Shown: in pieces, positions 4,230 to 26,940 of the stretch
Layout: each line of letters begins with the position of its first letter
Numbering within the stretch: the stretch's first letter is position 1
NCBI GenBank assembly: GCA_020536535.1
Contig: JAHLWZ010000193.1
Location: 1-64,000 of the forward strand
From: Pelomyxa schiedti
Lineage: Eukaryota; Protista; Evosea
Direction of reading: 5' to 3'
Length of the DNA: 64,000 nt
Program-made: the position numbers and the translations under genes
Notes under the pieces: model-generated
Seen by the model: the letters and a program-made list of their open reading frames with translations, nothing else
Told to the model about the DNA's origin: nothing
Database searches by the model: none

Positions 4230-7200
4230 ATGTCCAGCAATCATAACCGGCACGGCACCAAGCACGACAAACATAAGCACAAACACGACCACGACCACGA
4301 CAACGACAACGACAACGATCACGAAGAAGATGCAGGGGAGAAGTCGTCGTCTCATGGGCACCACCGGCACCACAGATCCGGAGGCGGAAGTGGCCTCAAG
4401 GACGAAGGCAGCCACAGAGCCGACGACTACGTAGGAGGCGGCGGCGGCAGAGAAGAGGAGGCCGCCGGTGGTGGTGGTGCGCAGGAGAAAAGCTCCGAGC
4501 ATAGCGGAGAGGGGGCAGCGGCTAGATCGGCGTCGACGTCTCTGTCTTTGTCGGCCTCCATCTCGCCGTCGTTGGCAGCGGCTCTACCGCCTGTGCGGTC
4601 GCCGTCCCCTTCGGGCGTCTTGTTATCGGCGTCGTGCCCGCTGTCGGCGTCTCCGGCGGTGCCCCCGCCGAGCACTTCGCCTTTTCTTGGGCCTGTGAGT
4701 GGGTCTGGAAACCAACTTGGGGTAGGCTTTTGTCAATCTCTGGGAAAACTTAAAGCCTCGCTTCTCTTCTCCTCTTTTTTTCTAATTCTTTGATTCTCTT
4801 CTGACGAAAAACATAGCTCAAGAGCGATGATTCCATGGGAAATCCTTCAGGAGGTAGGACTCTGAGCCTTGTATTGGTATTTTGTAACAGTATTCTCCAT
4901 AGCTACCAGCAAGGAGCTTTTAATGAAGCGACTTATGGAGCAGCGGCAAAGGAAGTCAAACGCAACGGCTGAGGCAAAGCGGAAGCAAATTGAGGAAGAC
5001 CAAAAACAAAAGTTGCTTGCAGAAGAAGCAGAGAAAAAACGAAAGCAAGAGGAGGAAGAGCAGAGATTGGCTGAAGAGAAACGACAAGAGGAAGAGCGGC
5101 TGGCAGAGATCAAACGTAAAGAAGACCTAGCAAAGAAAGAAGCTGAAGAACGAGCAAATAGAATAGAATCCGAAAGGCAAGCAAAAGTTGCACAGATAAA
5201 AGTTCAAGAACAACCAGCATGGGGTCAACTTCTGAGGAAAAAAAGTACCGCCGGAGGATTGAATGAACTTTCTCCACCGACATCTTCACTCGCACCTCCA
5301 ATCACACTCACCCCTGTACCGACACCTACACTACCATCTCACACTCACTCACCGTCTCTTTCACAATCTCCAACTACAGTTCCGTCTCTGTTAGTTACAC
5401 CACCACATGACCTTCGGGCTGCAACTCCACCAGTCATCACAAGTAATACAGCCACTCATCCGTTGAATCGAGCTAAATCGGCACAAACTTTCAAGAAGTC
5501 ATTTGTACCCACAGACCAAAGTGGTGGTGAGGAGCTGGCAAAAAAACTTGCAAAGATGCGTGGTTCCACTTCAAGTTCAGATAGTCAGTCAAGCACACCT
5601 CTCACATGTGGCTCCTTGTCCAAGTCTACATTGGTAGATGTGAAAGACACAAAAGTGGAGGCAAACACTAACGCGTTGAAGCAGCAACAAGTAAGTGTGA
5701 CTGGATTTCCATTCAATGTGAAATTGAAATCCAAAAGTACATCTCTACTAAACAAGCTAGCTGAAGAACCTGCAGTACAACTTTGTCCACCCCTTCCCAG
5801 TAGCTCTGAAAATTCTAGTGGCACGGTTCAAGGAGCAAATACCGTACTCGACGCACCTGTACTTTTAATAACACCACCAGTAGTTGTAGTAACAGCACCA
5901 ATATCACCTTCCTTCTCCCAGGCGATCACAATGGAGATAACAAACACCATTCCGCCTCAAGCAACATCATCAGAGGATTCCAGCCAACATCCTTCCGATC
6001 TTGTGAAAACGGGGATTCCAGAGCTACCGGATTCACACGCCGAAGAAGTACCCCATAATGTTCCATGTCCGAACTCGGTGATCGACACTGCATCCGAACA
6101 CCCTAAGATAAAGCATAAAAAGAACAAAAGGGAAGAACTTGCTGAGACTGAGGTATGTCCGGTTGAGGAAGCTCAGATTACCACCACAGTGGAAGAAGTT
6201 GAACATCACCACCATAGAAAGAAATCTCAACCCGAAATGCAAGAACCCCTCAGACTCCAACAGGAAGAAGAAGAGCAAAGAAAGAAAGAGAGGAAACGGA
6301 GGCATGAAGAGAAACGGAAAAAGAAAGAGGAGAAATTACAGAAACAAAGTGAAAGAGCAACGGAAGAGACACCACCTATCAGAGAAGTAGAGACGGTCGA
6401 ACACCTCATGGGAGAAGAAAGACAACAGACCGAGCAATCAGATGGGAACCACGTAAGAGAAGAGCCTATCGGAAGAGAGCTTGACAGCAAGTGTGCTGTG
6501 CCAGAAGCAAACTCCGCTGATGAAAAACCTCAGCCACTTGAAAATGCCGAGGCAAAACTAGAACCAGAACCCGAACTCGAACCACAACCCCAATTCGATA
6601 CACAAACACAAGCGGGAGCGGAAGTTGAACCTGAAGATCAAGCTCAAGCCGAACCAGAAACTCAAATTCAAACTCACGCGGAAGCTGAAGATCAAGCTCG
6701 ACCTGAAGCGGAACCAAAACCAGAACCAGAAGTTACTGCGATGGCACAATTGGAAACGGAAGTGGAAGTAGTTTCAGAGAAGAAACAAATTGCTGAGTTA
6801 GCTCAGCCAGCTGAAGAAGCGCCAAGGCGGCTAGAAGAAGAGGAGAAGACCAGGGAAGATAAGAGTAAACAAATTGAAGACGAGGCTAGCCTTTTGGAAG
6901 TAGAAGCGGAAAATAGACAACTAACAGAACAAAAAGAAGAATTGAAATGTGTAGTTGACGAGGCCAAACTCCTTCGTGAAGAAGAGAATAAAAAACTTGA
7001 AGAGGCTGAGCATGAACGAGCTGAAGAGGCACGAAAAGAGGAAGACAAAGAAAAAATGGAAGCGGCACTTAGAGCAGAGGAAGAGGCTAAAAGAATTGCT
7101 GAAGAGAAGGAGGTTCGAGAAGAACCTGAGAGACGAATTGCTGAAGAGGAAGCGCAGAAACAAGTGCATGAAATGCAACAGGGAGATCACCAGCGGCACC

Positions 7201-20875: not shown

Positions 20876-23800
20876 ATGGCGGCTCGGTCTGGTGTTGTAC
20901 CCCCAGCGGCGTCGTCAGCCAAGCACGACGGCAGATCTCTTAAGGACAAATTGGTCGCGTTGTCGCACGCCCAGGTGGCAGAAGCCGTTTCAGATGCACT
21001 GGAGACAGTCCCACCCTCCCATGAGCTATTCCCGGGGCTTCCAATAGTAGAGGTGCCCGAGGTCGTAGTCTCGCCCGCCGAGCCCGACGCGACCAAGCTT
21101 GCGGAGAGGAGCGCCGCCAAGTTGAATCTGTCAAAGATTGTTGTCAGTGCTGATCCAGATCCAAATTTGGTGTCGGACGATTTTGGAGACAGAAGCGTGG
21201 CGAGCGGTTGTTGGGCCCACAGGGTTGCCAAGGTAATTTCATTTCGGCACCCAATGGGGATGTCTCTTTAATTATGGTTGTCAAGTGTCACTTTTGTTTT
21301 AGTTTCCAATGATGTTGGCTCTGTGTGGTCTTGCTTTTCTCGTTGGCATTGCTGGTGGTTTTAAATTTTATTTGATGGCTCACCTGTAGCGTTATTTCTT
21401 TTTTTTTTTTTAGATGTATGAGGCAGATTCGGAGGATCTTCCACCATTCCCAGCAGCTTTTTTTGTGATACGTAGAGATGTGTTATCTCGGTCTTATGTA
21501 AAGCGATCATCCTTGATTGTATTAGAGCTACATGTTGGGGGTTAGGTCCAATAAATTTCTTCTCTCTGCTTTTCACAACAACTCGATACACCGGGAAAGT
21601 AAAACTTAAGCAACACACAGTTGAGAAGCAAGATTGCTCCTATCATTTCCGCACGTCAGTGACTTCTGGCACAATTGAAAAGATCGATAAAGGCACTGCT
21701 AGGCATATATATTATCCTGCTCGAACCATACAAGATGCCAAAGCAATTTATGGTTCTCTTCTCAGAGAAAAGGTAAAGTTAGAAAACTGTTTAATTTTTA
21801 TTGTGTTTGCAGACTTCAAAAAGCAACAAATATAAGAAAATAATGTTGGCTCTCTCTAACGTGGGGACTATCACAGGTTTCCATTTCACTGGTCCCTTTT
21901 CCCTTAAAATCTTTCCTAGGTAGTATTTCAACACTCCCAGTAGCTGTCCGTGACTTGCTTGTTCTCTTATACAACGAATCCGTTTTGCAACTTTGTCAAA
22001 AGGAAATCCAACTTTCAAAGCTGTCTGCACCACAAATAGACAAGGCTCTTGTGTGCCTTAGCAAATTGCAACAGGTTACCCTTCTTTCTTGGCTGTACAC
22101 AAACCCTTGTCCCTATTAAGGCAATTTCCTTGCATGAACCACTTGATGAAGCCACAGCCCAGCAGTTATCAACAGAATTTTATTCTAACTTACCTCTTCC
22201 CAACCACAAACAAGTGGTAAGAATTCTCCAGTCGGAAACTTTGTAATTTTTTTTCAAGGTCATAACCTCAAGTGATAGCCTTCTTATGTGGTTAGATACA
22301 CTTCAAACAATTCGGGATTTTTCCAACTTCGGTGAAAGTTCTTTTGACTTCACTGGGCGATTGAACGATGTTGATATGTTGTATCCTTTTTAATATGGAC
22401 AATTTATAAGACACCCAAGTACCTTAACCCCCAAGATACTACTCTCTCGACTGTAAACTCGAGCCTCTTCAATTTGATTCCTCTGAGTACATTTCTATCT
22501 GTGAAATGGTTTCCAGACATGCACCCTTGAATATTGGAAACATATTCCATGTATCAAGGCACATGGATCTCAGCTCCTTCTCGTCAGAAATGGGAAATGA
22601 AATGCTCCTCTTTCATGGATCGAAAATAGGCAATTGGTTGGGAATCCTTTCTCGAGGGTTGCTCCTCCCACAGATAGTAACTTCAGAGTATGGAGTAAAG
22701 CGTACAAATGCTGGGAATATGGGAGCAGGGCTTTATTTTTCCGACAGTCCACTGGTATCACTTAAGTATACCACTCCTTCTGCCTCCGGCTCCAGGTTAT
22801 TGCGGTATTCTCTGGAGGTCTCTAATTCAATGCTTAGGTATTTACTCATCTGCCGAGTGGCCCTTGGAAAAGTTCACATTTTGACGAACTACAATTTATC
22901 TCTGGTTGCTCCCCCACATGGGTTCAACAGTTGTCATGGCGTCAAGAGCACTTATAATTTAACAAGTGATTTTGACGATGATGAGTATGAGCAATCAACT
23001 TACATTAGGGGCTGTTCCCTTTTCATGTAATTCTCAGATATGCTATCTACACACCTGCTCAGCAATACATCCAGTATCTAGTTGAAATAAAGGGATACCA
23101 ACCGACAATGTTAGCTTCATCGACGAAGTCTATGATTTCTCAAGCTCTTGCTGGTATGCGGGAACGGCAGCCTGTATATTGTGCAGACATTCCGGGGCCA
23201 CTTCTTGATGTTGAACCTGTAAGTCATTTTGCACTCTCTTTCATTAAATCTCCAAGGTAACCGAAAAAGCGGGCCTTATCTCAACAAGTGGAGAGCCCTT
23301 GCCACTTGAAAGTGTTAGCCTTCACGCTAAATTGATAGGTTCTTCCATAGAGTCAATTTCCATAACAAACAAGCCTTTTAGACTTGGTTGGCCAGGTCGT
23401 CATACTTCAAGAATATCATAATTCAGGAGACTCCGCCATCCAGGCCAAATATGTCTTTCCTTTGGATGAAAAATCTGCCGTTGTTGGCTTCGAGTGTTTC
23501 ATTAATCGTATTCTTCGTCTTCATTTGTTTTCGCTTTAAACCGTTGCAGACAAACATATAGTGGGTGTGGTGAAAGAGAAAGAGCAGGCGCATAAGGAGT
23601 ATAAGGAAGCCATCGCACGTGGTGATGGTGCATACCTACTAGATGAGGCCAAATCAAATGTCTTTACTGTTTCTGTGGGAAATCTACCACCCCATACCAA
23701 AGTGGTTATCAAGATAACATGTTCGCAGGTTTCTTTTCGATAATCATTAACTATTTCTAGATATCACTGAACTTGGTCTTGAAGGTGATGCTAGAAAGTG

Positions 23801-26800
23801 GATTTGTCCAGTTAACCTTGTATCACAGCAAAAACAAGGCGCACTGGCTCAGGTCACACAGGCCTCAACCAAGTCAGTTCATGTTGCACAACATGAGGTA
23901 CTGTCATATGCTTTACGTTTCCTTATCCTATCAGGGAGCGTTTACCATGGAAGTCTCAATAGCGATGCCTCATGTGATTCATGCAATTGAAAGTCCATCA
24001 CATTCGATTCGCTATAAGCAGGCATCCAAGAAGGCAACATTATTCCTATTGGATCATGGTATGATGATTCTGGGTGCTAAAAAAGTGCATAAGAAAAAAA
24101 CCCAGAGGCTCTCAGTAGCGACTTCATTCTTGTAATTCGTCTATGTGATAGCCACACACCATTTATGTGGGTTGAAAAACATCCTTTGTGTATCAATACT
24201 CCTGATAATGAATTGCACGTTGCAATGGTGGCTTTGTATCCCTCTTTGAGTTCTCCGGAGGCACATTCACAATGTTTCCCCTTTGTTTTGTTTTGTGTTA
24301 ATATTCCCAGATACACTTATTATTGATCAATCTGCTAGCATGGCCTCAGCACAATTACAGTGCAAGCAAGTGGCACTGCAATTGCGTACCCTTCATCCCC
24401 CTAGAATTACCGTAATTCTTTGTAGTAAACGGGATACCACCTCTGGCGAACTTCAACCTTGTTATATTTGGCTCTTTCTTTGAAACTCTCTTTCTTTCAT
24501 CAACTCAAAAAACACGACAAACTGAAGAGATTGCTGTGACTACTATTAAAAGCATGGCTGCTGATTGGGGTTCAAGTGTTTTGTGGCCTACTTTAAAATC
24601 AGTTCTTCTTGAAATTGAGTGTAGAGCACATACCTCTGACAAAACGGAAGATACAAATATTTTCATTCTCACAGATGGGGATTTTTCTCACGATTCCCAA
24701 GTTATGAATGTATGTATGGTGCTCCCTAGGCCCACACAATCCTCAACCAATTTATTTTTTCTCTGCTCCAGCTTCTTCGTGATCACTGCCAAATTAAGAA
24801 GCATTCAACTCGCATTTTCTCATTTGGGATTGGGAATACTGTTCACAGACATAACGTCTTGAGTCTGGCCCGAATTGGAGGTGGTGAATGTGAATTTGTT
24901 TCCTCCACAAATCCTTTACGGCGACAGGTGACTGCGTCAAGTCTGGGGTAGAAATTTAACTATTTCTTAGGTGTATAGGCAATTGGAGAGGGCTAGACAA
25001 CCATGTCTGAAAGATATCAATGTTAGGTGGGGGGCCACTGCAAGTTCCAGTACCGTTCAACAGGCACCGTCTCAGATAATGACCCTATTCAATGGAGAGC
25101 GCACAATAATATATGCATTTATTCCTTCGGACTGCCAACAAGTTGTGACATTGATGTACTTGAATTGCTAAACTTTCTCAGGTCACACTTCATGCCACAG
25201 TAAACAATACCAACGAAGAGTACCATGCAACAGTCTTCTCTAATGTTGCTGAAATGGTGGAAGGGCTTACCCTCCATAGACTTTGTGCTCGGGCAATAGT
25301 CCGGTATGTTTTCTTGAAATATGTTATATTTCACCTTCTTACTAGAGATTGGGAAGAAATGTGTTTAGGGGAGGATCCGGTATCAAGTGAAGTGGCTCGA
25401 GCAAACGTGTGCATTCCTTTTCTATATGCAGGCATTGATATCCTGTAGCAAAAAGGGGAGATTATCCAACTTGGAATTCGTTACTCCCTTGCAACAACCC
25501 TGACCTCTTTTATTGCCGTTGAGGTAAGGATTTTTCCTTCTGCTCGATTTTCATTTTTTCTACAGGAAAGAACTGAGGCAGAAAAGAAGGGGTAACATTT
25601 TGGGGAACAAAAACACTTTTAATCGATTTTAAGAGATGTTAAGTTAAAGCCAACTCCTCCAATAAACGATTTGGCTGTGCAAGAAAAAGTCGATGAGCTT
25701 CCATTTTGTACCAACTGGAAAGAAGTTGTGTTACCTTCCCCCGGCACATTGGCAGTTAACACACGGACACCATACCCAGCAACAAAGCATTCAACTGTCT
25801 ACGACTACTGGGTATACAGCCCCCCAAGTGACAACGTTCCTCCATTACAAACAGAAAATCCAAGTGTGTTCATTCTTTATTGCAATTTTCTTATTGATTC
25901 CCCACAAGATTGGGAACTTACAAATAAGCCCAAAGGTTACCTTTCCCACTATTATTCCATGGCCTAAACAAACCCTACAAGATGATTGGAATGCCTTTCC
26001 GAAGAGAAATGAAAGAGCATTTCCAGCTTCTGGAAGGCGTGCCCGTAGAGGATATTTTGGAGGTGGGGACATCGGTGGAGGTGGAGGTGGAGCTGGTGGC
26101 GAGATAGCTTCGAGATTCCCACCACTTGCCTTAGGAGATTTATGTGGTAGCTCAGATGTTATGATGGACGGGATTTGTGATATCAATGAGGAGGAAGAAT
26201 GTCTTGAAGAAAATGATGACGATTATGGGGAAGAACCTATGGATGGTGATAATGTGGCGTTTTCCAAAGATGCACCTCCATGTGACATACCTCTAGCCAG
26301 CTCAGCCGCTCAGCCAGCTTCCACGGAGACAAAACCGAATCTCGGAACAACGCCACCTTCGAACAGTGCCTTGCGTTCGCTTTCTCCACAGCTCCGTACT
26401 GGGAAGGATGCCCTCGACCTTCTCGATTGCCAAGGGGCTATTATTCGGCAACAAGATGAATGCCTTGACAGAATTGAAACCAACATTTCCCAAACCAGAT
26501 TCCTTGCAGCATCCATGAACAGAGAATTGGGCGAACACACTAGATTGCTGTCAGGAAGCTATGAGCTGCAAAGGGCTGAAAGGATGCAATCCGCTGGCTG
26601 CTGCTTTATTGCCACCGCAGCCTATGGCACAGACATGGACCCCCGGATAGATACGCTGCGCCGTTTCCGTGACACAACACTTCACAAACACTCACTCGGA
26701 CGAGCGTTCACGCGTTTCTACTATGCGACATCACCCCCTTTTGCCAAGTGGCTCACCCAACACCCCTGGGCCAGGCTCACAGTTCGCATTCTACTTCTTC

Positions 26801-26940
26801 CACTCGTAACCTTACTTGATCACCTGGGTTATAATCCTCACTCTGAGAATTCCCCACAAGATGCAGCAAAGACCTTACTGACACTGCTTGCGTTCCTCTC
26901 CTTTCTTGGTTTGGCTGTCCTGCCCTTATTCATATTCTGA
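20876..26940 (+). CDS. PARP4: PARP4/vault-PARP-like ADP-ribosyltransferase (WGR-like, PARP, VIT, vWA) with C-terminal half-SNARE motif, CFI-box-CTERM domain and tail anchor
   Basis: LLFHGS..GILSRGLLLP..GAGLYFSDS..CRVALGK..FDDDEY (H-Y-E triad) at about 22600-23000; VIT (AKYVFPLDEKSAVVGFE..VFTVSVGNLPP) at about 23290-23770; vWA (IIDQSASM, FILTDG) at about 24310-24990; last exon ends in a hydrophobic tail at 26940. Confidence 0.9.

What the first reader, a model, noticed from the sequence alone, without database searches (positions are those of the whole stretch)
20876..26940. Tail-anchored PARP4-like enzyme fused to a half Qc-SNARE motif and a prokaryote-type CFI-box-CTERM domain
Seen: an intact H-Y-E PARP domain, VIT and vWA in PARP4 order. 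Two short in-frame introns (about 25864-25908 and 25936-25981) continue the frame into a last exon encoding an acidic linker, a SNARE-like heptad, CCFIATAAYG...LRRFRD...YYATSPPFA and a terminal hydrophobic helix. Established: animal PARP4 is soluble and ends in an MVP-binding region. Inference: that region is replaced here by membrane-targeting modules, giving a membrane-tethered ADP-ribosyltransferase. It could act at endosomes, phagosomes or symbiont vacuoles in trafficking or defence. I know of no described protein with this architecture.
Basis: partly seen in the sequence, partly recalled or inferred. Interest (0 to 1): 0.9.

Follow-up and report, generated by a model that had tools for sequence, protein, structure and literature searches.

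The report
Membrane-anchored PARP4-like enzyme of Pelomyxa
An anaerobic amoeba (Pelomyxa schiedti) makes a vault-type ADP-ribosyltransferase whose usual tail is replaced by a SNARE-like helix, a domain otherwise seen almost only in bacteria, and a membrane anchor; sister copies carry a different host-protein fragment at the same spot.

Summary
The window is Pelomyxa schiedti (Archamoebae).

- **Domains:** PARP regulatory and catalytic domains (H-Y-E intact), VIT and vWA all pass Pfam cut-offs. The CFI-box-CTERM domain scores 91-95 bits (cut-off 40). The protein ends in its only strongly hydrophobic helix.
- **Splicing:** RNA contigs show both mini-introns (25864-25908, 25936-25981) removed, which takes out the stop at 25965-25967.
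- **Single gene:** two paralogs (contigs C4, C975) are collinear. An unrelated metagenomic eukaryote has vWA-to-CFI-box-to-anchor as one uninterrupted reading frame.
- **Age:** three paralogs share an intron inside the CFI-box, so the domain is an old resident, not contamination.
- **SNARE call:** weak. Pfam SNARE gives E 0.031 over 13 residues, and the Qc/His register is not supported over a syntaxin-like register with Gln.
- **Cassette:** the segment before the CFI-box varies between paralogs: a full R-SNARE motif (C4), a Ras switch-I peptide (C975), and the Q-SNARE-like helix here.

Most likely it is a tail-anchored, cytosol-facing PARP4-family enzyme with an exchangeable docking or bait cassette. 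I rate it a new variant of a known kind. Function is untested.

The parts
20876..21232 (+). Probable first coding exon (119 codons), missing from the GenBank model, which starts at 21414
   Evidence: Open frame from the ATG at 20876. Homologous to the N-termini of paralogs P0003 and P0254 (tblastn E 4.9e-4; motif WAHRVAK). GT..AG intron 21233-21413 joins ...WAHRVAK to MYEAD... in frame. No RNA evidence.
21414..22400 (+). Exons for the N-terminal region and the PARP regulatory (helical) domain
   Evidence: P0255 residues 118-219 hit PARP_reg at 28.9 bits, cut-off 26.8. Exons are collinear with C4 and C975.
22428..23218 (+). PARP catalytic domain, three exons, introns 22796-22837 and 22985-23037
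   Evidence: Pfam PARP E 1.6e-21. Human PARP4 8swy E 6.7e-43 with H, Y and E conserved. Introns seen in RNA contigs.
23257..23720 (+). VIT domain, three exons
   Evidence: Pfam VIT E 5e-9 and 3e-20 on exons; 121 bits on P0255 residues 485-595. Joints 23335>23379 and 23507>23550 in RNA.
24311..24927 (+). vWA domain with MIDAS motif DQSAS and ILTDG
   Evidence: VWA_3 34.2 bits on P0255 residues 740-899. Exon translations. Weak exon-wise hits.
24971..25863 (+). Conserved post-vWA region (...TSFIAVEE..., KVDELPFCTNWKE, ...QTENP)
   Evidence: 36-88% identity to C4 and C975. RNA joints 24925>24969, 25141>25182 and 25590>25633.
25864..25908 (+). Mini-intron 1 (45 nt, GT..AG)
   Evidence: Skipped in X1 RNA contig record 3. 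Splicing restores the motif NP-x-W-x-L-T shared with paralogs (ENPNWELT, NNPYWTLT, SNPHWQIS).
25909..25935 (+). 27-nt micro-exon
   Evidence: Present between the two joints in the same RNA contig. Present in GenBank model P0255.
25936..25981 (+). Mini-intron 2 (46 nt, GT..AG), which holds the in-frame stop at 25965-25967
   Evidence: Joint 25932>25979, cut +3, in X1 record 3. Boundaries checked.
25982..26397 (+). Low-complexity linker (Gly-rich, acidic, Ser/Pro/Ala-rich), not conserved between paralogs
   Evidence: No Pfam hit. No tblastn match to paralogs before residue 287 of the 424-aa frame. RNA contig 25983-26145.
26398..26592 (+). 65-residue helix with a Q-SNARE-like signature (QQDECLDRIETNI): the variable cassette
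   Evidence: AF2 helix 2-66, pLDDT 83-94. Pfam SNARE E 0.031. hhalign 13 columns. About 45% identity to metagenomic eukaryote P0004 over 134 aa that include this helix.
26602..26808 (+). CFI-box-CTERM domain (CCFIATAAYG...LRRFRD...YYATSPPFA...), four short helices
   Evidence: NF041770 91-95 bits, cut-off 40. 28 invariant columns among the six eukaryotic copies. AF2 pLDDT 92-96.
26863..26937 (+). Terminal hydrophobic helix (tail anchor); stop codon at 26938-26940
   Evidence: Kyte-Doolittle 19-residue mean 2.51, the only such segment in P0255. AF2 helix 154-180.

Best explanation
This is one expressed Pelomyxa schiedti gene for a PARP4-family (clade 5, 'vault-type') ADP-ribosyltransferase. It is about 1584 aa if exon 1 is counted. 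The catalytic, regulatory, VIT and vWA parts are intact. The region that binds the major vault protein in animals is replaced by four elements: a disordered linker, a 65-residue helix with a Q-SNARE-like signature, a 69-residue CFI-box domain of bacterial type, and a hydrophobic helix that ends the protein. With no signal peptide, the protein should insert post-translationally as a tail-anchored protein. The enzyme, the helix and the CFI-box would then face the cytosol on an endomembrane (inferred). The helix sits in a slot that differs between paralogs: an R-SNARE motif, a Ras switch-I peptide, and the Q-SNARE-like helix here. I read that slot as an exchangeable docking cassette that brings partners of membrane-bound trafficking or signalling proteins next to the ADP-ribosyltransferase/VIT/vWA part at the membrane (inferred). 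The CFI-box was taken up once from prokaryotes, before the paralogs arose, and serves as the membrane-proximal module of the anchor. Its biochemical role is unknown.
For: Organism and model: P0003 is KAH3768093.1 of P. schiedti, on a contig of 466,869 bases that matches C4. The genome is 52.4 Mb in 5337 scaffolds, as in PMC8887013. Domains. RNA: 15 GT..AG joints are listed, including three in one contig across 25590-26006, and contigs cover 25983-26145 and 26201-26933. Single polypeptide: C4 and C975 are collinear from the N-terminus to the CFI-box, and L021:1-2058 of another eukaryote is one open frame from vWA to the anchor. Old resident: all four CFI-box loci in the genome lie in this gene family, and three share an intron in the codon of Arg in FR|D. 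Prokaryotic origin: 21,229 representative proteins at E<=1e-3, mostly secreted-type proteins (S8, FN3, PKD, Ig), and at least 591 loci in bacterial genomes. Anchor. Variable cassette: the P0003 R-SNARE matches Pfam at 9e-13 and VAMP8 at 2e-8. The P0254 peptide ALFCDEYDPTIEDSYY hits only Ras/Rap residues 26-41. Paralogs are 58-59% identical over PARP-VIT-vWA but unalignable in linker and cassette. No MVP-binding-region similarity.
Against: No single RNA contig spans PARP to CFI-box. RNA coverage has a gap at 26146-26200, and the 3' exon has 3-5 times the contig depth, so an additional short transcript is not excluded. The sides of the two mini-intron joints are 24 nt, under the tool's 31-nt bridging rule, because the micro-exon is only 27 nt. 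Membrane insertion, topology and catalytic activity are all untested. In prokaryotes the CFI-box follows a signal-peptide-bearing passenger and precedes a transmembrane helix plus a basic tail. It is therefore probably extracytoplasmic there, the opposite side from the one proposed here. SNARE similarity of the window's helix is statistically weak. The docking role of the cassette rests on architecture alone.
Confidence: 0.6

Rival explanations
1. Integrated-bait sensor. The cassette (Q-SNARE-like helix here, R-SNARE and Ras switch-I in the paralogs) mimics membrane-bound host proteins that microbial effectors attack. Modification or cleavage of the bait would switch the PARP/VIT/vWA part on or release it from the membrane, as integrated decoys do in NLR immune receptors.
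For: The cassette is the only non-conserved slot between paralogs and holds fragments, not whole domains. A fourth paralog, P0256, carries a Rab/Ras-like GTPase that starts at switch I. PARP4-likes of animals and other amoebae carry pieces of actin (model positions 7-66 of 410), the acidic tail of ribosomal P protein (47-88 of 88), SNARE motifs without the membrane helix, ubiquitin and 14-3-3. From my own knowledge, these are classic targets or cofactors of bacterial toxins. Pelomyxa is packed with prokaryotic symbionts (PMC10579272, abstract).
Against: There is no functional data of any kind. The R-SNARE piece is only 31-41% identical to the genome's own R-SNAREs, and a decoy need not be, but might be expected to be, closer. 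Appended domains were read by others as links to signalling or the cytoskeleton (PMC4245714). I found no paper proposing this, so it is unsupported as well as unpublished.
Confidence: 0.17
2. Plain sorting device. The helix, CFI-box and transmembrane helix are a SNARE-derived tail anchor that sends each paralog to a particular compartment, and the helix has no partner-recruiting role. Alternatively the helices act as real SNAREs in fusion.
For: SNARE motifs and tail anchors carry compartment identity (established knowledge). P0003 has a complete 53-residue R-SNARE motif with the zero-layer Arg.
Against: A 69-residue folded domain plus a loop lies between the helix and the membrane helix. This uncouples zippering from the bilayer, so a fusion role is unlikely. 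The C975 paralog has a Ras peptide instead of a SNARE motif, which has no known sorting role.
Confidence: 0.13
3. Two products: a soluble PARP4-like protein ending at the stop at 25967 by retention of the second mini-intron, and a separate short transcript for linker, helix, CFI-box and anchor. The fused form would be minor or an annotation artefact.
For: Contig depth rises from 3-5 to 12-22 after 26175, and no RNA contig listed covers 26146-26200. In-frame ATGs exist near 26155.
Against: The spliced form is what the RNA contigs show. X3's contig starts at 26201 on a Nextera adapter, which marks a fragment end, not a transcript start. A 3' bias is expected for oligo-dT single-cell libraries (Smart-seq2 is cited in PMC8887013). 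Collinear paralogs and the uninterrupted frame in L021 also argue against it.
Confidence: 0.06
4. Bacterial-style use. The CFI-box is a C-terminal sorting or processing signal and the passenger is exported or displayed on the extracytoplasmic side, as in prokaryotic CFI-box proteins.
For: Prokaryotic members have signal peptides, extracellular-type passengers and a transmembrane helix plus basic tail after the domain. VIT-vWA proteins can be extracellular (TIGR03788-like similarity).
Against: There is no N-terminal hydrophobic segment in any of the three paralogs, and the eukaryotic copies have no basic tail. The PARP domain needs NAD+ and all relatives are intracellular (established knowledge).
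Confidence: 0.04

Closest known systems
Animal PARP4 (vPARP), the vault-associated ADP-ribosyltransferase
   Same: Same order of PARP regulatory domain, H-Y-E catalytic domain, VIT and vWA. The catalytic domain matches human PARP4 far better (E 6.7e-43) than PARP2 (2.8e-16). Identity to animal PARP4s is 34-40% over about 90% of the core.
   Different: No BRCT domain. No similarity to the C-terminal MVP-binding region. It has instead a helix cassette, a CFI-box and a membrane helix. Precomputed Pfam families PF26156 and PF26166 of animal PARP4s are absent from all Pelomyxa copies. I could not check what those families are.
PARP4-like proteins of Amoebozoa and invertebrates with appended domains (Perina et al. 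2014, PMC4245714)
   Same: The clade is expanded in Amoebozoa, and extra modules follow the vWA region: 14-3-3, actin, ubiquitin, and also synaptobrevin motifs, the ribosomal P tail and Hsp70.
   Different: Those proteins are soluble by prediction. Of the 120 best PARP4-likes, only the three Pelomyxa proteins have a CFI-box, and only these three, one sea-urchin protein (P0296) and a weaker case (P0271) have a hydrophobic segment at the C-terminus.
PARP16 (ARTD15), the known tail-anchored PARP of the ER
   Same: A PARP catalytic domain held on the cytosolic face of a membrane by a C-terminal transmembrane helix (PMC4245714 mentions the transmembrane region; the ER tail-anchor is from my own knowledge).
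   Different: It belongs to a different clade (6), is small, has no VIT or vWA, no CFI-box and no SNARE-like helix. The anchoring arose independently.
Prokaryotic CFI-box-CTERM proteins (NCBIfam NF041770)
   Same: The full-length domain scores over the curated cut-off, with the same invariant residues (C, F-I-A-T-A-A, R..F-R-D, Y-Y, S-P-P) and a following hydrophobic helix.
   Different: The prokaryotic proteins have signal peptides, secreted-type passengers and a basic tail after the membrane helix. Here the passenger is a cytosolic enzyme and the protein ends with the helix. The eukaryotic copies contain a spliceosomal intron.
SNARE proteins (syntaxin-type Q-SNAREs; R-SNAREs such as VAMP8)
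   Same: The C4 paralog has a complete R-SNARE motif. The window's helix shares the LD-x-IE-x-N-I signature of syntaxin-type motifs and precedes a C-terminal membrane helix.
   Different: The window's helix fails the Pfam cut-off. A folded 69-residue domain separates helix and membrane. The protein is about 1500 residues of enzyme, not a small fusion protein.

Membership tests
PARP4 / clade 5 vault-type PARP | PARP catalytic domain with the H-Y-E triad, closest to PARP4 | tested here: met
   Pfam PARP E 1.6e-21. The alignment to human PARP4 8swy, E 6.7e-43, keeps H, Y and E; PARP2 scores only 2.8e-16.
PARP4 / clade 5 vault-type PARP | VIT followed by vWA after the catalytic domain | tested here: met
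   VIT 121 bits and VWA_3 34.2 bits (cut-off 27) on P0255, in that order. MIDAS motif DQSAS.
PARP4 / clade 5 vault-type PARP | N-terminal BRCT domain (animal members) | tested here: not met
   No BRCT hit in P0255 or P0254, whereas bat PARP4 P0283 gives BRCT at E 4e-12 in the same scan. PMC4245714 ascribes the BRCT domain to animal PARP4s.
PARP4 / clade 5 vault-type PARP | C-terminal MVP-interaction region, association with vaults | tested here: not met
   BLASTP of P0255:1060-1465 against P0283:1030-1720 gives nothing better than E 0.05 in low-complexity sequence. MVP itself is encoded in the genome. Physical association is not testable here.
CFI-box-CTERM (NF041770) | Score over the curated cut-off across the whole model | tested here: met
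   91.3-95.2 bits, cut-off 40, model positions 1-69 of 69.
CFI-box-CTERM (NF041770) | C-terminal position, followed by a hydrophobic helix | tested here: met
   The domain ends 43 residues before the C-terminus and a terminal helix follows. Most homologs have tails of 0-60 residues.
CFI-box-CTERM (NF041770) | Signal peptide and extracytoplasmic passenger, basic tail after the membrane helix (as seen in prokaryotic members) | tested here: not met
   No N-terminal hydrophobic segment and no basic tail in P0255, P0003 or P0254.
SNARE (Q-SNARE, Pfam PF05739) | SNARE motif over the Pfam gathering score | tested here: not met
   14.7 bits against 26.8, E 0.031, 13 residues. Not among 20 own-genome matches at E<=10. 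PDB phmmer empty.
SNARE (Q-SNARE, Pfam PF05739) | About 53-residue heptad helix with a polar zero layer | tested here: inconclusive
AF2 gives one 65-residue helix.
SNARE (Q-SNARE, Pfam PF05739) | Membrane helix directly after the motif | tested here: not met
   The CFI-box (69 aa) and a loop lie between them.
Tail-anchored membrane proteins | Single hydrophobic helix at the extreme C-terminus, no signal peptide | tested here: met
   Only hydrophobic window is 1441-1465 of 1465; nothing at the N-terminus.
Tail-anchored membrane proteins | Post-translational insertion, cytosolic N-terminal domain | not testable with these tools
   Needs localisation and topology experiments.

The most novel reading that the evidence does not exclude
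The PARP4 family, here and in animals, is an effector-sensing system. Short copies of host proteins that microbes attack (SNARE motifs, Ras/Rab switch regions, actin N-terminus, ribosomal P tail, ubiquitin, 14-3-3) are strung behind the vWA domain as integrated baits. In Pelomyxa the baits for membrane-bound targets are held at the membrane by a domesticated bacterial CFI-box anchor, so that attack on the bait triggers or relocates ADP-ribosylation.
Probability: 0.15. Interest if true: 0.85.

Novelty: new variant of a known kind. Interest (0 to 1): 0.6.

Why it matters
PARP4 and the vault particle have lacked a clear function for decades. This lineage uncouples the conserved PARP-VIT-vWA core from the vault-binding tail and fixes it to a membrane. 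The one variable slot is filled with pieces of trafficking and signalling proteins. That gives a concrete, testable handle on what the core does: it acts on whatever the tail brings to it.

It is also, as far as my searches reach, the first case of the widespread bacterial CFI-box-CTERM domain living in a eukaryotic gene. It is intron-bearing, expressed and conserved in a second eukaryote. This offers a tractable system for finding out what the uncharacterised domain does.

Tried and rejected
**Searches that gave nothing**
- PDB sequence search with the SNARE-like helix returned only a chance collagenase hit.
- Foldseek of the AF2 model against the PDB found no match at E<=0.001; the best rows are generic long helices.
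- The ESM Atlas feature search gave no usable hit.
- The full-text search for 'CFI-box-CTERM' found 0 papers. Searches for PARP4 with decoy, bait or guard found nothing relevant. The P. schiedti genome paper does not mention PARP, vault or SNARE.

**Source of the cassettes in the genome**
- The window helix has only two weak matches (E 0.03). One, on C531, has a similar ...IGEELQEH... stretch but no Pfam SNARE hit.
- The R-SNARE piece of C4 is at most 41% identical to other R-SNARE loci.
- The Ras-peptide query found only itself, because it is too short for that tool.

**Database gaps and rejected readings**
- Word-index searches with the C-terminus did not return P0254 or P0255, although they contain it. 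That is a sensitivity gap of the tool, not absence.
- Misassembly is rejected: the layout recurs in paralogs and in L021, and a DNA contig spans the stretch, although it may be the assembly's own source.
- Bacterial contamination is rejected: spliceosomal introns lie in and around the domain.

- I made no joined spliced protein of my own. Exons were searched by reference, and the full-length analyses used the deposited model P0255 returned by a tool.

Full report
**What the window is.** The window is eukaryotic, with many GT..AG introns of 37-53 nt. Its assembly has 52,367,397 bases in 5337 contigs. A paralogous protein returned by the representative search is KAH3768093.1, [quoted passage not shown]. 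It sits on a contig of 466,869 bases, the length of contig C4 of this assembly. The genome paper gives 52.4 Mb, 5337 scaffolds and 7.4 introns per gene (PMC8887013). The organism is therefore the anaerobic archamoeba Pelomyxa schiedti.

**The observation: the enzyme core.**
- Pfam finds the PARP catalytic domain on exon 22428-23027 (E 1.6e-21) and VIT on the next exons.
- The catalytic domain aligns to the solved human PARP4 domain (8swy, E 6.7e-43) with His, Tyr and Glu in place. PARP2 scores only 2.8e-16.
- vWA is too fragmented to score exon by exon. On the deposited model P0255 it reaches 34.2 bits (cut-off 27), after PARP_reg, PARP and VIT in PARP4 order.
- The MIDAS motif DQSAS and the ILTDG motif are visible in the exon translations.

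**The observation: the C-terminal part.** NCBIfam NF041770 (CFI_box_CTERM) matches 26602-26808 over its whole length at 91-95 bits, against a cut-off of 40. The last 25 residues are the only strongly hydrophobic stretch of the protein.

**Is it one gene?** Four lines of evidence say yes.
- RNA contigs from three single-cell transcriptome runs of one sample show 15 GT..AG joints along the gene. One 303-nt contig carries 25590>25633, 25863>25909 and 25932>25979 (cut +3). Further contigs cover 25983-26145 and 26201-26933.
- The GenBank model for this locus (P0255, 1465 aa) has the same splicing and C-terminus.
- Two paralogous loci (C4, protein P0003; C975, protein P0254) are collinear with the window gene from the N-terminus to the CFI-box. 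Splicing of mini-intron 1 restores a motif shared by the paralogs (ENPNWELT, NNPYWTLT, SNPHWQIS).
- A metagenomic contig from another eukaryote, which has an RNA polymerase III RPC5 gene next door, holds vWA, linker, helix, CFI-box and anchor in one uninterrupted frame of 686 codons (L021:1-2058). It is about 45% identical to the window over the helix plus the start of the CFI-box.

Some caveats remain:
- No single RNA contig spans the whole gene.
- None of the RNA contigs listed covers 26146-26200.
- The 3' exon is 3-5 times deeper, which fits oligo-dT single-cell libraries but does not exclude a short extra transcript.
- The micro-exon is only 27 nt, so the joints have 24-nt sides, under the tool's 31-nt rule.
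- The DNA run that spans the stretch may be the assembly's own source.

**Gene start.** The GenBank model probably lacks a first exon. The stretch 20876-21232 is open and homologous to the paralogs' N-termini. A 181-nt GT..AG intron joins ...WAHRVAK to MYEAD... as in P0003.

**The CFI-box.** The family is very large: 21,229 cluster representatives at E<=1e-3.
- Where sources name the proteins, they are secreted-type bacterial proteins such as S8 peptidases and FN3, PKD or Ig-like repeat proteins.
- The exact motif occurs in at least 591 loci of prokaryote genomes. These include Dehalococcoidia, Gammaproteobacteria, Desulfobacterota (with Syntrophales), Bdellovibrionota, Myxococcota and candidate phyla.
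- Prokaryotic examples have a signal peptide, and after the domain a membrane helix and a basic tail. The domain is therefore probably outside the cell there (inference).
- In P. schiedti there are four CFI-box loci, all in this gene family. Three are PARP-VIT-vWA genes and one (C476) is a VIT-vWA gene without a detectable PARP domain.
- C4, C975 and C476 share an intron in the same codon (the Arg of FR|D). The window copy lacks it.
- The domain was therefore present before the paralogs diverged and is not contamination.
- AlphaFold2 with 109 aligned sequences (mean pLDDT 88) gives four short helices for the domain, preceded by one 65-residue helix and followed by the terminal helix. Foldseek finds no solved relative.
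- I found no paper on the domain.

**The SNARE claim.** For the window's helix the support is thin.
- Pfam SNARE gives E 0.031 and 14.7 bits, with 13 residues (CLDRIETNISQTR) on model positions 2-14.
- hhalign to an alignment of this genome's own syntaxin-type exons aligns the same 13 columns at 31% probability.
- PDB phmmer finds nothing.
- That placement corresponds to the segment just after the zero layer of syntaxin-type motifs. It would put the second Gln of RQQDE at the zero layer. From my memory of syntaxin 1A, QGEMIDRIEYNV resembles QDECLDRIETNI; this is a lead, not a test.
The subtype is unresolved.
- The helix is nevertheless conserved in the second eukaryote, which shares the C-x-D-R-[IL]-[DE]-T-N motif.

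**The variable cassette.** The slot before the CFI-box is the most interesting feature.
- In the C4 paralog it holds a complete R-SNARE motif. Pfam Synaptobrevin gives 9e-13, and VAMP8 gives 2e-8 over 53 residues with the zero-layer Arg.
- In the C975 paralog it holds ALFCDEYDPTIEDSYY, which in the PDB matches only Ras/Rap residues 26-41, the switch I region (333 sequences, best E 0.003). The peptide is partly encoded on a 42-nt micro-exon.
- A fourth PARP4-like paralog (P0256) has no CFI-box but carries a Ras/Rab-like GTPase domain that begins at switch I.
- The paralogs are 58-59% identical over the core and 54-74% identical in the CFI-box. They do not align at all in the linker and cassette.

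**Wider context.** PARP4-like proteins with appended 14-3-3, actin or ubiquitin domains, and an expansion of the clade in Amoebozoa, are published (PMC4245714). My search adds several points.
- The additions are often fragments. They include actin model positions 7-66 of 410, the last 40 residues of ribosomal P protein, and SNARE motifs without the membrane helix in a brittle star, a clam and a sponge.
- Among the 120 best PARP4-likes, only the three Pelomyxa proteins have a CFI-box (local HMM).
- In the length-matched search with the C-terminus, no other PARP-containing protein appeared.
- The membrane-anchored layout is therefore rare, not common in databases.

**Mechanism.**
- Shown: the domains, the splicing, the paralogy and the terminal helix.
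- Inferred: with no signal peptide and a helix ending the chain, the protein is tail-anchored, with enzyme, helix and CFI-box on the cytosolic face.
- Inferred: the vault-binding tail is gone, although MVP genes are present on at least six contigs. This enzyme therefore probably works at a membrane rather than inside vaults.
- Inferred: the cassette brings partners to the enzyme.

The bolder reading treats the cassettes as baits for microbial effectors. It fits the choice of fragments and the symbiont-rich biology of Pelomyxa, but it has no direct support; I give it about 0.15. A fusion-competent SNARE role is unlikely, because a folded domain separates the helix from the membrane.

Noticed in passing
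G000 contig C975, about 4560-4854 (-); protein P0254 residues 1511-1528: This paralog carries a 16-residue copy of the Ras switch-I region (ALFCDEYDPTIEDSYY) just before its CFI-box. Fourteen residues of it lie on a 42-nt micro-exon flanked by introns of 48 and 43 nt.
   Followed up: partly
Protein P0256 (P. schiedti, contig of 31,797 bases), residues about 1430-1636: This fourth PARP4-like paralog has no CFI-box. It ends in a Ras/Rab-like GTPase domain that starts at Pfam Ras position 22 (switch I), with a P-loop-like segment (KVVVVGGTNVGKSS) placed after it. Either the GTPase is circularly permuted or the gene model is merged. It also has a Cys-rich hydrophobic stretch near residue 1240.
   Followed up: partly
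Proteins P0258, P0263, P0290, P0309 and the Pfam column: PARP4-like proteins of Acanthamoeba, a brittle star, a clam and a sponge carry fragments rather than whole domains behind the vWA. These are actin positions 7-66 of 410, the ribosomal P-protein tail 47-88 of 88, and synaptobrevin motifs without the membrane helix, plus whole ubiquitin and 14-3-3. Hsp70, Snf7, clathrin-adaptor and EF-hand families appear in others.
   Followed up: partly
G000 contigs C800:138324-138914, C797:137499-138083, C346:34062-34589, C1157:6094-6645, C277:5254-5439 and 103034-103276: PARP-domain matches lie inside very long uninterrupted open frames (1806-2560 aa), unlike the intron-rich PARP4-like genes. I did not determine what these giant intron-less PARP genes are.
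   Followed up: no
G000 contigs C810, C516, C352, C518, C850, C93: Vault (MVP) repeats occur on at least six contigs, so the amoeba has several MVP paralogs.
   Followed up: no
G000:C531:32842-32961 (-); L013:679-1641 (-): An open frame holds a Q-SNARE-like stretch (EQDRALDAIAESIHRTKEIACAIGEELQEHNALLQEL) preceded by an E/R-rich coiled-coil exon. It has no Pfam SNARE hit and no membrane helix in the same frame. It is 38% identical to the window's helix over 40 residues.
   Followed up: partly
window 21414 (GenBank model start) versus 20876: The deposited protein model for this gene seems to miss a 119-codon first exon that its paralogs have.
   Followed up: partly
window 22591 and 26379: RNA contigs of run X2 read C instead of T at 22591 and A instead of G at 26379, each in one low-depth contig. 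These may be alleles or errors.
   Followed up: no
Protein P0296 (Lytechinus pictus PARP4-like, 2520 aa): This protein ends in a hydrophobic tail (...ARMIPIILFIAIIGA), so a tail-anchored PARP4-like protein may also exist in a sea urchin, without a CFI-box.
   Followed up: no
L022 (Logan SRR21762700 contig, 3143 nt), protein P0038: A transcript-like contig from an unidentified organism encodes VIT-vWA-CFI-box-membrane helix without PARP. It is 44-48% identical to the Pelomyxa copies, so the VIT-vWA-CFI-box layout exists outside P. schiedti.
   Followed up: partly
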